A stretch of DNA of 63,550 nucleotides, the filler included, from Hyphochytrium catenoides (taxonomy: Eukaryota > Protista > Hyphochytriomycota): NCBI GenBank assembly GCA_900088475.1. It is 10 parts of 10 records of this genome, joined end to end, with 100 filler letters (N's around TTAATTAATTAA, not from the genome) between each part and the next. Parts side by side here need not be neighbours in the genome. Positions count along the whole stretch, not along the records: positions 41,465 to 44,896 come from FLMG01001572.1; 9 more parts are not named here. One strand, given 5' to 3'. Below are positions 41,365-44,896 of the stretch, piece by piece. The position numbers and the translations under genes are program-made. The notes under the pieces are model-generated. The model was not told where the DNA came from. It did not search any database and saw only the letters and a program-made list of their open reading frames with translations. How positions within the stretch are numbered: the first letter of the stretch is position 1; each line of letters starts with the position of its first letter.

Positions 41365-41709
41365 NNNNNNNNNNNNNNNNNNNNNNNNNNNNNNNNNNNN
41401 NNNNNNNNTTAATTAATTAANNNNNNNNNNNNNNNNNNNNNNNNNNNNNNNNNNNNNNNNNNNNTTTTGGCACTCAAAGAGCTGCCCGACACGCGGGAAA
41501 GGGGACACTTCTCTCCGCTCATATATATAGGGTTAGAGTTAGAACTACGCGTAGAACTACCCGTACGGTTGCCGAGGGACCATTGGCAAGGTCGATGCAA
41601 AGCACCACACGGCTCATATAAGTAGGGTTACTTCTGTTATTCATTTCTAAAGTGAGAGTTGACTCCTTCTTTCTCTTCATAACCAACGGCCATTCACATG
41701 AAGCTAGTG

Positions 41710-44700
41710 TTAGCTGCTCATAGAAATTGTCGCAGAAAGGATCTCACCGGCACGGGCTCGGCGGTCCATTCCCCAAACGAAAACACAAGTGGCATTCACC
41801 AGCAATATCTGTTGCCTGCTGGACTGTGTAAGCCAGGAAGCAAACTTTTCAGGCGTAGGAAGCCCTGAGTCATGAAAGCCAAGGTCTTGAATGAACTCGC
41901 TCGCATCAAAGAACAGGTTTGCGTGCCGATAGACAAACCAGGCAACAGGCAAAATCACATCTTTACCACCAGAATCGCAGAGTTGGCGATTACCAAACGC
42001 ACCTTCAGCGAAGTGAAAGTACTCACTCTTGTCCTCCCCAATTTGCGGAAGGCTACAGATAAAACAATGGCCTTTCCCCCTGAACTTGATCTCCACAGAA
42101 CAGCCGCGCGTTGTATGGCCTCGATCCAGACATCGGAGGCACAAATCTAGCGTTTGATCTCCTATACCAAATAGCTGTTTACATCGACCTATATTGTGAG
42201 CTGCTAAGCTTCCTTGAAGGCCTAAGACATAGCATATAGGGCAGGGGGAGTCATGACGAAAGATGTATAGGTAACCCTTAAGCCGATCCCTAAACGATCT
42301 TTGGTACTGAGCATGACGGCGCGCCAATCGTGCCATGATTTGGGATGGCGTGTTAGCAGAAAGCACTGTCTTCTGCTTCTTGAAAGGTGACTGAGCATCA
42401 GCTTCAGGGTCATTGAGACCCGACGAAGATGCGCCAGAGATTGACGCGTTGGCGGGCTGGCAGGTGGCGGCCTCACATACCCAACATTTCTCGACCCCTG
42501 GCCAGACGGATGTCTCTAGTATGCAGGTACTGCCATGACCGTCGAGAAAAGCCTGAAGTCGTTGTCTCATGCAGCTCTGGCAATCCAATACGAGATCCTT
42601 GAAGCTCAATGCGTCATCCACTTTGTTCTTGATGCCACCTCTTTTCATCAACTGGACGAAATCCTGGATGACCTCTTCAGTGGTAACTAAGATTGCCTTT
42701 GCCGGTAACCCATCTCTCCCAGCTCTCCCACTTTCTTGCGCGTAGTCAATCACAGAGTGTGAAAACCCATAATGTATAACGGCGCGGACCTACAGAATGA
42801 AGGGCAACATGACGTTTGTTAGGTGAGGCTGCAAGTCATACTCAAAAGCAGGGCTCAATACGTTATGCTCGCTGGCCAACCTTTGCAAAGTCTACTCCGG
42901 CGCCAAAAGCCGACGTTGCGACCATCACACCGCCAACACTCTCTCTCCAGCAGCGAAACGATGCCAACTTCTCTTCCTCCGACATGCCGTAGAACATGGA
43001 GACGTTGATAGTGAATGAGGTGTCTCCTTGGATGAACGCGCCCGCCGATTCAAGTCCAGCACAGACGGCGTTGACAATTCTTATCTCGGGACAAAAGACT
43101 ATTACTCTGTCATCTTCGGACGCTTTCTCCAGACACCTCACTGCTTGTTGTATGACACTTGGTAGTACGTCATCCTTGCCTGCGACGTGAAGGACAGAAT
43201 ACCCAATGTTCCGTCGTGATGTCCCAGTCCGAATCACCGAGAATCTCCTGTTCATGTATCTACTAGCTATCTTCTCCAATGACTTCGGCAGGGTAGCCGT
43301 GAGAGCAAGAATGGGGCAGGAGTACACCGTCATCCCCCTGAGATTCTCCATGACAGGTCTATAGTCACTGGCGGTTAGTGCTAAGTGAAACTCATCAAAC
43401 ACTATGCGTGAGAGGCTTTCGTCGTTGTCCATTGTTGCGAGGAGAGTGGTGAATGTCTCACTAACCGCTTGCTCTGCAGATACCAGAATCAAAGATGGAG
43501 CCTTTTTCAATACCTTCTGCGGATCACTTTCGGGTCCCCACGCCTCACAAGAAAGTTTGGCGTCGTCGCATCGGCGTCGAAGGTCATTCTTGAGTGAAAC
43601 TAAAGGAACTATGACCACGGTGGTCTTCGCTTTCCTATTAGTTTCCATGAACGCTGCCAACATAAAGAGAAGGCTTTTGCCTCCGCCGGTCGGCAGAACA
43701 ACAAGCAAGTCACTATTGCGTTCTAATACTTGTCCCACCGACTACGCCTGAAGCTCTGATTTGAAGAACGCGCCATTGCCAGGTGTTGACGGCAGAAAGT
43801 CCTTGAGAGCATCTGGTATCGTTGGCAATAACGACATTGAATCCTTCACTACATAGTTGAGCTCTGGGCAGAAGACGGTAACCTCATCAACAAAGTACAA
43901 AGGTGAAAACATGTAAGCGTGCACTTACCAGTTGGAAAGTCAAGGCTCCGAGGATAGATGTGAACTGTTTCTTTAATGTGAACTTCTCTCAAGGTCTGTT
44001 CTTCGCGGCTCCCCTCTCCTAAAGGCATTCTGCTTCCAACGCGGACTTGCGGGTGATGAGCCTCTTGAGCACGCATAATGAGGTTTTGCCAAGCTATCGA
44101 GCAGCGGTGAAAAACCTCTCTCTTGTCACTCCCAAGAAGGCGCAAGTAGGAACTCGTCAGTCGCGCGTACTTGTCACCAGCTGTTCTTGACGAATGTCCC
44201 ATCTGTTGATCGTAAATAGCTTGAATCGACTTCTTTGCCGCCTCAGCCTCGTCACCAAGATGAGCATTCGTAAACGCCTTCACGGCATGCCGGTACTGGT
44301 TGAAAGTCATTCTCAGCTGGTATTTTAGACAGTACGTGGTGAACACTCTTCTGATCTCCTCCGCAGAGGCGCGTCGCTGTCCTCTGACAAACAGGAAGTC
44401 TTTGTAGAGATTGCTCACGCTAGTATTGTACAGCTTCTTTGCAACAAGCCTGTGTGAAACGATTGAACAGTAAGTTGTCGTCCTTATTCCAGCGCATTGT
44501 GGCGAGATTGGGAAACCATTGCGCTTACCTCTCAAAGGGTTTCACGAGACACAGATAGTTTAGGAGGAGCTTTGCGACAGGCTTAGGTAAAAAGCGGGCG
44601 ATCGCAGAGTCGTGGCCAGTTAACGAAGAAGTTTTGCTGTATTGCTGAACGATCATAAAAGTGTCCTGGCATATGAAGACGTTGCGGAGGCCACTGCGAG

Positions 44701-44896
44701 AATTGGTCAGCATATATTCCCTTAACTCAGTGGCTCGCGCTGGCTGTCCACTGGTAAGATGAACAAGGACCAGGAGAACATTAACGAATTCAGCAACCTT
44801 CTCGGCCCATAACGAAAGCTCCGCCTTGTTCCACTGGCGTCTTCCAGTCAAAGGATGGATGAGAAGAAAGGTTCTCGGTGGGTCACGTGACGCGAG
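41710..44896 (-). mobile_element. Tyrosine-recombinase + RecQ-like SF2 helicase + Cys/His zinc-motif fusion gene (telomere-linked-helicase-like); 5' end lost in gap; one in-frame TAG
   Basis: Introns 44528-44450, 43928-43864 and 42880-42790 splice in frame. YR residues: SGQPARATE (R), QYSK (K), QYRH (R), QMGHS (H), DKY (Y). Helicase motifs: LPTGGGKS, VPLVSL, DEFH, LTAT, ATSAFGAGVD, QESGRAGRDG, RQC-like CMR..CWVC. C-terminal CPIC..H..C, CLRC...GH....C and CFIC. Confidence 0.85.

What the first reader, a model, noticed from the sequence alone, without database searches (positions are those of the whole stretch)
41710..44896. Spliced tyrosine recombinase-RecQ helicase-zinc finger fusion: candidate self-mobilising YR-helicase element
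Seen: four ORF-track fragments join through three short GT-AG introns (79, 65 and 91 nt) into one reading frame. The N-terminal part has tyrosine-recombinase catalytic residues in the correct order: GQPAR (Arg I), YSK (Lys), QYRH (Arg II; the canonical His of HxxR is not conserved), QMGHS (His) and DKY (Tyr nucleophile). A full SF2 RecQ-type helicase follows (motifs I-VI and RQC-like cysteines), then CxxC/His zinc clusters. The contig lacks host microsatellites. Established: similar 'telomere-linked RecQ helicases' with a GQPARxxE motif occur in fungi and are usually annotated only as helicases, while known eukaryotic YR elements (Crypton, DIRS, Starship captains) do not fuse YR to RecQ. Inference: a DNA transposon that excises and integrates via YR and uses its own helicase for unwinding or replication, here in a probably non-fungal host and possibly horizontally spread.
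Basis: partly seen in the sequence, partly recalled or inferred. Interest (0 to 1): 0.88.

Follow-up and report, generated by a model that had tools for sequence, protein, structure and literature searches.

The report
Telomere-linked helicase gene with recombinase domain
This is part of a gene of the known fungal "telomere-linked helicase" family, and its previously unexplained extra domain has the fold and catalytic residues of a DNA-cutting-and-rejoining tyrosine recombinase, which gives a testable idea of how these chromosome-end genes spread.

Summary
On the minus strand, four exons join through GT-AG introns of exactly 79, 65 and 91 nt. The joined frame holds a premature TAG (43744-43742), and the 5' end runs off the contig, so about 650 N-terminal residues are missing.

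The TAG reads TAC (Tyr) in another sample of the same organism and in two soil metagenomes. A soil copy that is 99% identical is intact and adds an N-terminal C2H2/OrsD domain. Changes between the two copies are 16 synonymous to 9 non-synonymous, so the lineage is under purifying selection.

The model's best Swiss-Prot matches are S. pombe Tlh2 and Tlh1, then S. cerevisiae Y' helicases. The gene therefore belongs to the known telomere-linked helicase (TLH) family. Two homologue contigs end in (TTAGGG)n about 7 kb downstream of the gene.

The "autonomous transposon" reading is untested, and a non-fungal host is not supported. I found no paper linking the TLH domain to tyrosine recombinases.

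The parts
44529..44896 (-). Exon 1 as seen here. It is partial, with the reading frame open at the contig edge. It encodes the first half of the recombinase-like (TLH) domain, including Arg I (GQPAR, 44749-44735) and the hairpin Lys (YSK, 44641-44633).
   Evidence: The upstream continuation is seen in the 99%-identical soil contig L008.
44450..44528 (-). Intron 1, 79 nt, GTAAGC...ACACAG.
   Evidence: The junction reads ..LVKPFER|LVAKKLY.. and aligns without a break to intron-less homologues.
43929..44449 (-). Exon 2. It encodes the second half of the recombinase-like domain: Arg II (YRH, 44295-44287), His (MGHS, 44202-44191) and the Tyr nucleophile candidate (DKY, 44175-44167). A poorly conserved linker follows.
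43864..43928 (-). Intron 2, 65 nt, GTAAGT...CCCAG.
   Evidence: It is the same in L008.
42881..43863 (-). Exon 3. It encodes the RecQ-like SF2 helicase core: Q-motif region FFKSELQA (43768-43745), motif I LPTGGGKS (43696-43673), motif II DEFH (43396-43385) and motif III LTAT (43303-43292).
   Evidence: Pfam DEAD 1e-18, ResIII and Helicase_C. PDB matches RECQL5, WRN, BLM and RecQ. Coordinates.
43742..43744 (-). Premature in-frame stop TAG (residue 337 of the visible protein). It reads TAC (Tyr) in run X2 (same organism) and in soil runs X4 and X5.
42790..42880 (-). Intron 3, 91 nt, GTTGGC...CTGTAG. It splits helicase motif V from motif VI.
   Evidence: The junction ..GVDFAK|VRAVIHYG.. matches the family consensus.
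41713..42789 (-). Exon 4. It encodes helicase motif VI QESGRAGRDG (42738-42709), a RecQ-type Zn-binding Cys cluster (42582-42475), Cys/His knuckles including CX2CX4HX4C (42243-42043), and a C-terminal tail of unknown fold.
   Evidence: The RecQ_Zn_bind Pfam match is in homologue P0025. The single-sequence AF2 model of this exon failed with pLDDT 33.
41710..41712 (-). Natural stop codon (TAA).
41664..41665 (.). 3' edge of the segment shared with the soil copies, 45 nt after the stop. Beyond it the window and L008/L009 are unrelated, and L008 continues with GGGTTAGGGTTAC.
41465..41579 (.). High-copy repeat next to the gene's 3' flank. Its word depth is 16-55 times that of the gene. It holds one of two 19-nt direct repeats with a telomere-like TAGGGTTA core (41517-41535 and 41612-41630).

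Best explanation
Identity. [quoted passage not shown] The full protein is seen in a 99%-identical soil copy. Its order is an N-terminal C2H2/OrsD zinc finger, a spacer, the 'TLH domain', a RecQ-like SF2 helicase with RecQ zinc module, and CCHC-type knuckles.

Shown here:
- The TLH domain, so far described only as a TLH-specific motif of unknown function, has the catalytic fold of tyrosine recombinases.
- It keeps an invariant Arg-Lys-Arg-His-Tyr set. The His of HxxR is missing, as in type IB topoisomerases.
- The window's allele is knocked out by a TAC-to-TAG change, but the gene lineage is under purifying selection.

Inferred mechanism. The zinc fingers bring the protein to subtelomeric or telomeric DNA. 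The recombinase module cuts and rejoins DNA through a 3'-phosphotyrosine link. The helicase opens or branch-migrates the substrate. Together they promote exchange, excision and re-insertion, or copying of the TLH-bearing block between chromosome ends. The unit would then behave as a selfish subtelomeric element, like yeast Y', which can also help telomere upkeep when telomerase fails.

My odds:
- TLH-family membership and the recombinase fold: about 0.85-0.9.
- The recombinase domain is catalytically active: about 0.6.
- It drives spread of the element between chromosome ends: about 0.35-0.4.
For: - Gene model.
- Helicase: Pfam DEAD, Helicase_C and ResIII; PDB RECQL5, WRN, BLM and RecQ.
- Family: an HMMER scan of 1.84 billion representatives with exon 2 gave 30 hits. 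The long hits carry OrsD, this domain, DEAD and Helicase_C.
- Pfam Phage_integrase matches P0029 at E 1.5e-4, spanning profile positions 22-170 of 172.
- Language-model neighbours include ResT/TelK, NDC10_II, DUF3435 and Phage_integrase, all recombinase-fold families.
- Conservation: R, K, R, H and Y are kept in all members that cover the positions, at 20-35% identity.
- TLH link: the best Swiss-Prot structural matches are Tlh2 (E 1e-11) and Tlh1 (4e-10), then Y'-Help1 copies (1e-7 to 1e-4), then XerC. AFDB clusters include 'Telomere-associated RecQ helicase' and C2H2 proteins.
- Telomere linkage: L002 and L006 end in (TTAGGG)n 6.9 and 6.7 kb downstream, with the gene pointing to the end.
- Intact allele and N-terminus.
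- Selection: 16 synonymous to 9 non-synonymous changes, binomial p = 4e-5 against 25% expected synonymous. Introns are twice as diverged as exons.
- Paralogous variants of about 90% identity exist for the 5' part in organism A.
- Literature: the TLH domain has no assigned function (bioRxiv 10.1101/2024.02.27.582403; 10.1101/2022.03.07.483234). TLH genes show presence/absence between Botrytis strains (same preprint).
Against: - The fold evidence comes from a homologue only 30% identical to the window's protein. The window's own domain is split by an intron and could not be folded.
- Foldseek E-values against PDB are weak (0.026 at best), and the Pfam score of 22 bits is below the gathering cut-off of 27.1.
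- A profile of the family found nothing in PDB by sequence, and hhalign against single Cre and lambda Int sequences failed.
- The His of HxxR is absent.
- No activity, no recombination site, no element ends and no circular form were seen.
- The window contig has no telomere repeat array, so telomere linkage of this copy is not shown.
- The window allele itself is a null.
- Organism identity is coded, so 'fungus' is an inference.
Confidence: 0.6

Rival explanations
1. The gene is part of an autonomous, interspersed DNA transposon, a Crypton-like element that has acquired a RecQ helicase. It excises and integrates anywhere suitable, sits in a non-fungal host, and may have arrived by horizontal transfer.
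For: - A recombinase fold with an intact catalytic set is fused to a helicase.
- The window and soil copies diverge sharply 45 nt after the stop, as at an element edge.
- Paralogous variants exist in organism A.
- TLH presence/absence between strains is reported in Botrytis (10.1101/2022.03.07.483234).
- A TARA homologue is flanked by 156-nt direct repeats.
Against: - Two of six homologue contigs end in telomere repeats downstream of the gene, with subtelomeric tandem repeats between.
- The best named relatives are telomere-linked helicases and Y' helicases.
- No termini, target sites or empty sites were seen.
- There is no Pfam or Atlas link to Crypton. DUF3435 appears only as a weak Atlas feature lead.
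- Intron style, the Ascomycota neighbours and the soil and air metagenome holders point to a fungus.
Confidence: 0.15
2. A domesticated host gene with no mobility. The RecQ helicase and the recombinase-like module form a self-contained junction-processing or topoisomerase-like enzyme, comparable to the RecQ-Top3 pairing. It serves recombination-based telomere maintenance or replication of subtelomeric repeats. Alternatively, the recombinase-like domain only binds DNA.
For: - Purifying selection acts on the gene.
- TLH and Y' helicases are induced in telomerase-negative survivors, as cited in 10.1101/2024.02.27.582403.
- The position near telomeres is conserved.
Against: - The genes are dispensable and vary in presence between strains (Botrytis preprint).
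- There is a null allele in this very window.
- The family is multi-copy and fast-evolving, with only 30 hits at E<=1e-3 in 1.84 billion representatives for exon 2. Selfish elements typically look like this; core maintenance genes do not.
- Structural neighbours are closer to Xer and Cre recombinases than to topoisomerase IB.
Confidence: 0.2
3. A decaying pseudogene or relic. The copy in the window is simply a dead remnant, and the motifs are leftovers without present function.
For: - There is an in-frame TAG at 43744-43742, supported by run X1 at full depth.
- Subtelomeric gene families commonly hold many broken copies (10.1101/2024.02.27.582403).
Against: - This is the only defect in 2,949 coding bases.
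- The same codon is TAC in X2, X4 and X5.
- There is no frameshift, and GC is even at 48-52% with no RIP-like AT enrichment.
- The 16:9 synonymous to non-synonymous ratio against the soil copy shows recent constraint.
Confidence: 0.05

Closest known systems
Telomere-linked RecQ-like helicases (TLH): S. pombe Tlh1/Tlh2, Magnaporthe oryzae TLH1, Ustilago maydis UTASa, BcTLH, Fusarium oxysporum TLHs
   Same: - The architecture matches: N-terminal C2H2 motifs (OrsD in L008), a ~250-aa TLH domain just upstream of the helicase, and a RecQ-like core.
- The homologue model's best reviewed structural matches are Tlh2 and Tlh1.
- Homologues lie about 7 kb from (TTAGGG)n.
- There are signs of several copies.
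   Different: - Telomere linkage of this particular copy is not shown.
- It has extra C-terminal CCHC knuckles, which are conserved in its close subfamily.
- The literature treats the TLH domain as function-unknown. Here it is read as a tyrosine-recombinase fold.
S. cerevisiae Y' element helicase Y'-Help1 (YRF1 copies)
   Same: - A structurally similar domain sits upstream of an SF2 helicase (Foldseek E 1e-7 to 1e-4, TM by query about 0.5).
- Y' is a subtelomeric, multi-copy unit that amplifies in survivors (established knowledge).
   Different: - Sequence identity is only about 16%.
- I did not compare its helicase with this one.
Simple tyrosine recombinases (XerA/XerC/XerD/XerH, Cre, lambda Int; Pfam PF00589)
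   Same: - The motif order matches: Arg I in a G.PAR.TE helix, Lys in the beta hairpin, Arg II, G-H-S, and Tyr about 9 residues later.
   Different: - The His of HxxR is absent.
- The Pfam score is below the family cut-off.
- The domain is fused to a helicase and zinc fingers in a eukaryotic protein of more than 1,500 aa.
- No recombination site is known.
Eukaryotic tyrosine-recombinase elements: Crypton, DIRS/Ngaro, Starship captains (DUF3435)
   Same: They use a tyrosine recombinase in a eukaryotic, often fungal, genome. DUF3435 and NDC10_II appear among weak language-model neighbours.
   Different: - No Pfam match to DUF3435 or to other Crypton-associated domains.
- None of these families carries a RecQ-like helicase (established knowledge).
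- No short terminal direct repeats or cargo structure were seen.
Type IB topoisomerases and telomere resolvases (ResT/TelK/TelA)
   Same: They share the superfold, and topoisomerase IB shares the R-K-R-H-Y pentad without the HxxR His. ResT/TelK appears as an Atlas feature neighbour at 0.90.

Membership tests
Telomere-linked helicase (TLH) family | RecQ-type SF2 helicase core | tested here: met
   Pfam DEAD, Helicase_C and ResIII. The best PDB sequence matches are RECQL5, WRN, BLM and RecQ. Motifs I, II, III and VI are present.
Telomere-linked helicase (TLH) family | TLH-specific domain of about 250 aa directly upstream of the helicase | tested here: met
   Window residues 22-271 align to P0029, P0012, P0022 and others. 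The model of the P0029 domain hits S. pombe Tlh2 [800-1074] at E 1e-11 and Tlh1 at 4e-10. This is a test by proxy through a 30%-identical homologue.
Telomere-linked helicase (TLH) family | N-terminal C2H2 zinc-finger motifs | tested here: met
   This part lies off the window piece. It is present as Pfam OrsD (5e-11) in the 99%-identical soil contig L008 and in P0028, P0029, P0031 and P0036.
Telomere-linked helicase (TLH) family | Subtelomeric position, usually several copies per genome | tested here: inconclusive
   The 3.4-kb piece has no telomere array, only telomere-like cores in a 19-nt repeat. Homologue contigs L002 and L006 end in (TTAGGG)n. Paralogous variants of about 90% identity cover 44540-44896 in X1 and X2.
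Tyrosine recombinase / DNA breaking-rejoining superfamily | Catalytic-domain fold | tested here: met
   [not shown]
Tyrosine recombinase / DNA breaking-rejoining superfamily | Catalytic residues R-K-H-R-H/W-Y in order | tested here: inconclusive
   Five of six are present and near-invariant in the family (R, K, R, H, Y). The His of HxxR is replaced by variable residues. That pattern is normal for type IB topoisomerases but unusual for recombinases.
Tyrosine recombinase / DNA breaking-rejoining superfamily | Pfam PF00589 match at the gathering score | tested here: not met
   P0029:560-935 scores 22.0 bits (E 1.5e-4) against a cut-off of 27.1. The window's own exon pieces give no match.
Tyrosine recombinase / DNA breaking-rejoining superfamily | Covalent 3'-phosphotyrosine cleavage and rejoining of DNA | not testable with these tools
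   This needs biochemistry.
Crypton-type DNA transposon | Defined element ends with short direct repeats matching the target, plus empty sites | tested here: inconclusive
   Only one boundary-like break was seen (41665/41664, against L008). There is no second end, no empty site, and one weak joint.
Crypton-type DNA transposon | Sequence kinship of the recombinase to Crypton or DUF3435 recombinases | tested here: not met
   No Pfam DUF3435 or related match. DUF3435 appears only as an Atlas feature lead at 0.88.

The most novel reading that the evidence does not exclude
TLH genes, and with them the yeast Y' elements, are or descend from a so far unrecognised class of eukaryotic mobile elements. 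These elements would pair a tyrosine recombinase with a RecQ-like helicase and target chromosome ends. Their recombinase would cut and rejoin subtelomeric or telomeric DNA to excise, circularise and re-insert or copy the unit, which would explain how these blocks spread between telomeres and amplify in telomerase-negative survivors.
Probability: 0.3. Interest if true: 0.85.

Novelty: new member of a known kind. Interest (0 to 1): 0.6.

Why it matters
TLH and Y' helicase genes have been known for decades as the last genes before the telomere in many fungi. The role of the TLH-specific domain, and the way these blocks move between chromosome ends, are still open.

Reading that domain as a tyrosine recombinase with a conserved active-site set turns a descriptive family into a testable enzyme hypothesis. 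Tests include Tyr-to-Phe alleles, covalent-complex assays and circle detection, and S. pombe and S. cerevisiae offer ready genetics.

If the domain is active, it would add a helicase-coupled branch to the eukaryotic tyrosine-recombinase elements. It would also link subtelomere plasticity, alternative telomere maintenance and selfish DNA.

The copy in this window is ordinary in itself: a partial allele knocked out by a nonsense change.

Tried and rejected
- Pfam on the window's exon-1 and exon-2 translations gave no family even at E<=1.
- A profile of 32 family sequences against PDB sequences gave no match at E<=10.
- hhalign of the family profile against single Cre and lambda Int sequences gave no meaningful alignment, because single-sequence templates are too weak.
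- The search for homologous proteins with P0029's domain and with a 12-sequence alignment returned only a handful of relatives and no named TLH. The word index is too coarse for this fast-evolving family.
- A single-sequence AF2 model of the C-terminal exon failed with pLDDT 33, so the fold of the zinc-knuckle region and tail is unknown.
- Rfam found nothing in the piece.
- The RNA-run search found only one run, of unrecorded kind and from another organism, holding 21% of the sampled words. There is therefore no expression or splice evidence.
- A longer intron 2 that would skip the TAG was rejected. The 187-nt option breaks the frame. The 200-nt option keeps the frame but removes the conserved Q-motif region, and other samples simply read TAC.
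- A RIP origin for the stop was rejected. The change is a C/G transversion and GC is even.
- Six literature searches combining TLH, Tlh1/2, YRF1, RecQ or subtelomere terms with tyrosine recombinase, integrase or Crypton found no paper making the link. The 2009 paper that defined the TLH domain is not in the library.
Full report
**1. What is in the sequence**

The piece 41465-44896 carries one long gene on the minus strand. Six-frame translation gives four large open fragments.
- Intron 1: 44528-44450, 79 nt, GTAAGC..ACACAG.
- Intron 2: 43928-43864, 65 nt, GTAAGT..CCCAG.
- Intron 3: 42880-42790, 91 nt, GTTGGC..CTGTAG.

Junctions 1 and 3 fall inside conserved blocks that run without a break in intron-less homologues (..LVKPFER|LVAKKLY.. 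and ..GVDFAK|VRAVIHYG..). The splice model is therefore not a chance construct.

- The joined frame contains a TAG at 43744-43742 (residue 337 of 983 visible residues). It lies between the helicase Q-motif region (FFKSELQA) and motif I.
- The frame is still open at 44896, so the gene runs off the contig.

**2. The stop is an allele, not decay**

I laid Logan contigs of four runs on the piece. The window's base at 43742 is shared by run X1 only. Run X2 (same organism label, another sample) and two soil metagenomes (X4, X5) read the complement of TAC, which is Tyr.

I recovered the 6,746-nt soil contig as L008.
- It is 99.0% identical over 3,235 nt and intact at this codon.
- It extends 3.4 kb upstream, showing at least three more fungal-type introns with CTAAC-like branch sites.
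- It adds an N-terminal exon with a Pfam OrsD (C2H2-type) domain at 5e-11.

The two copies differ as follows:
- 25 exon substitutions, 16 synonymous and 9 non-synonymous (binomial p = 4e-5 against 25% expected synonymous).
- One in-frame codon insertion or deletion.
- Introns about twice as diverged as exons.

GC is even at 48-52%, with no RIP-like decay. The lineage is therefore a constrained protein-coding gene, and the window holds a recent null allele.

**3. The helicase and zinc parts**

- Exon 3 matches Pfam DEAD (1e-18), ResIII and Helicase_C.
- By sequence it matches the solved structures of RECQL5, WRN, BLM, RECQ1 and bacterial RecQ.
- Motifs I (PTGGGKS), II (DEFH), III (LTAT) and VI (QESGRAGRDG) are present.
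- After the core comes a RecQ-type cysteine cluster. The homologue P0025 matches Pfam RecQ_Zn_bind there.
- Further Cys/His clusters follow, including a classical CX2CX4HX4C knuckle. All are conserved in the family consensus.
- A single-sequence AlphaFold run on this exon failed (pLDDT 33), so its fold is not known.

**4. The upstream domain**

The window's own exon-1 and exon-2 translations match no Pfam family. An exhaustive HMMER scan of 1.84 billion representatives with exon 2 found only 30 proteins at E<=1e-3. The long ones have the order OrsD, this domain, DEAD, Helicase_C.

In an alignment of these proteins, which are 20-35% identical to one another, five positions stand out as near-invariant:
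- Arg in HLxSGQPARxTE.
- Lys in YxK at a hairpin.
- Arg in YRH.
- His in Q.GHS.
- Tyr about nine residues later.

The window's domain is split by intron 1, so I could not hand it in as one reference. I instead folded the best intron-less homologue (P0029:560-935, 30% identical) with a 32-row alignment. The model has pLDDT 76 and pTM 0.75.
- Foldseek's PDB list is almost purely tyrosine recombinases and type IB topoisomerases, but with weak E-values of 0.026 or worse.
- Pfam Phage_integrase matches the same stretch of P0029 over nearly the whole profile at E 1.5e-4, below the curated cut-off.
- Language-model neighbours of the window's exon 2 include ResT/TelK, NDC10_II, DUF3435 and Phage_integrase, all of this superfold.

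I conclude that the domain has the tyrosine-recombinase catalytic fold and keeps a plausible active site. Catalysis itself is inferred, not shown.

**5. Which family**

Against reviewed UniProt models, the P0029 domain's best matches are:
- S. pombe Tlh2 residues 800-1074 (E 1e-11) and Tlh1 (4e-10).
- Eight S. cerevisiae Y' element helicase (Y'-Help1/YRF1) copies (1e-7 to 1e-4).
- Only after these, bacterial XerC.

AlphaFold DB clusters give dozens of entries, mostly unnamed or uncharacterised. The named ones include 'C2H2-type domain-containing', 'Helicase ATP-binding' and 'Telomere-associated RecQ helicase' proteins.

[quoted passage not shown] The TLH domain has no assigned function in those papers (bioRxiv 10.1101/2024.02.27.582403; 10.1101/2022.03.07.483234). 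The window's gene fits all three sequence criteria.

Location could not be tested for this copy. For homologues, two of six contigs (L002, L006) end in (TTAGGG)n 6.9 and 6.7 kb beyond the stop codon, with the gene pointing to the chromosome end and internal tandem repeats in between.

**6. Surroundings of this copy**

- The window and the soil copies part company exactly at 41665/41664, 45 nt after the stop. The soil contigs continue with GGGTTAGGGTTAC and then unrelated sequence. This may be an old healed break or the edge of the duplicated unit.
- The window's own flank runs into a repeat (41465-41579) with 16-55 times the gene's word depth. It carries a 19-nt direct repeat with a telomere-like core.
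- The 5' part of the gene has additional variants of about 90% identity in both runs of organism A, so there is more than one copy or fragment.
- One X1 contig joins 41528 to 44852, but with only 20 nt on its shorter side. I leave it unexplained.

**7. Host**

The organism is coded. The following point to a fungus, probably an ascomycete:
- Short introns with fungal-type branch sites.
- Ascomycota as the nearest Atlas clusters.
- Near-identical copies in soil metagenomes and partial ones in air metagenomes.

Nothing supports a non-fungal host or horizontal transfer. Whether the contig is a contaminant of organism A's assembly cannot be decided here.

**8. How it probably works**

Shown:
- The architecture of zinc finger, recombinase fold, RecQ-like helicase and zinc knuckles.
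- A conserved catalytic set.
- Purifying selection.
- Telomere linkage of relatives.

Inferred: the zinc fingers bring the protein to subtelomeric or telomeric DNA. The recombinase module makes a 3'-phosphotyrosine break and rejoins it to another duplex, and the helicase opens or branch-migrates the substrate. The outcome would be exchange, excision and re-insertion, or copying of the TLH block between chromosome ends, as a selfish subtelomeric element that can also help ends survive without telomerase.

Rivals:
- A purely domesticated junction-processing or topoisomerase-like enzyme. The pentad without the HxxR His is that of type IB topoisomerases, but Xer and Cre are the closer structures.
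- A dead relic, which the selection data rule out for the lineage.

**9. Novelty**

The gene is a new member of a known family. What seems not to be in the literature I could search is the reading of the TLH domain as a tyrosine recombinase shared with the Y' helicases. No paper combined these terms. The founding 2009 paper and database annotations could not be checked, so priority is uncertain.

Noticed in passing
window 41465-41579: This stretch next to the gene's 3' flank has word depth 13,715 in X1 and 400 in X2, against 216-285 and 22-29 over the gene. It is a much more abundant repeat, which is probably why the contig ends here. Contigs from other loci diverge after 41531.
   Followed up: partly
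window 41517-41535 and 41612-41630: Two copies of a 19-nt direct repeat, GCTCATATA(TA/AG)TAGGGTTA, lie 95 nt apart and carry a telomere-like TAGGGTTA core. Next to them is a 12-nt tandem pair, TAGAACTAC(G/C)CG (41540-41563).
   Followed up: no
window 41528 joined to 44852 (run X1): One contig skips 3,323 nt, which is nearly the whole gene, with 3-nt microhomology. Only 20 nt lie on its shorter side. It could be a deletion derivative or another copy of the flanking repeat.
   Followed up: no
L008 6608-6746 and L009 (soil contigs): The soil copies leave the window's sequence 45 nt after the stop. They continue with GGGTTAGGGTTAC, then unrelated sequence ending in a (GA)n run. A short interstitial telomere seam sits exactly at the break.
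   Followed up: partly
window 42984 (exon 3): The soil copies carry one extra in-frame codon here (TCC put in on the + strand; FYGMSEEE becomes FYGRMSEEE).
   Followed up: yes
L005 90-235 and 5783-5938 (TARA marine contig, protein P0028): 156-nt direct repeats (80% identical) flank a TLH-like gene. This suggests tandem units or terminal repeats in a marine eukaryote.
   Followed up: no
L002 4923-11854, L006 4521-11216, L004 11400-15623: The space between TLH-like genes and the telomere is filled with internal repeats of about 1.6 kb in L002 and L006. Their stop-to-telomere distances are nearly equal (6.9 and 6.7 kb) although the two proteins are distant. L004 has a ~224-bp satellite array downstream.
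   Followed up: partly
Swiss-Prot models of S. cerevisiae YRF1 copies (e.g. O13559 residues 11-377): The Y' element helicases have a domain upstream of their helicase that is structurally similar to the TLH / recombinase-like domain. Whether the catalytic residues survive there was not checked.
   Followed up: partly
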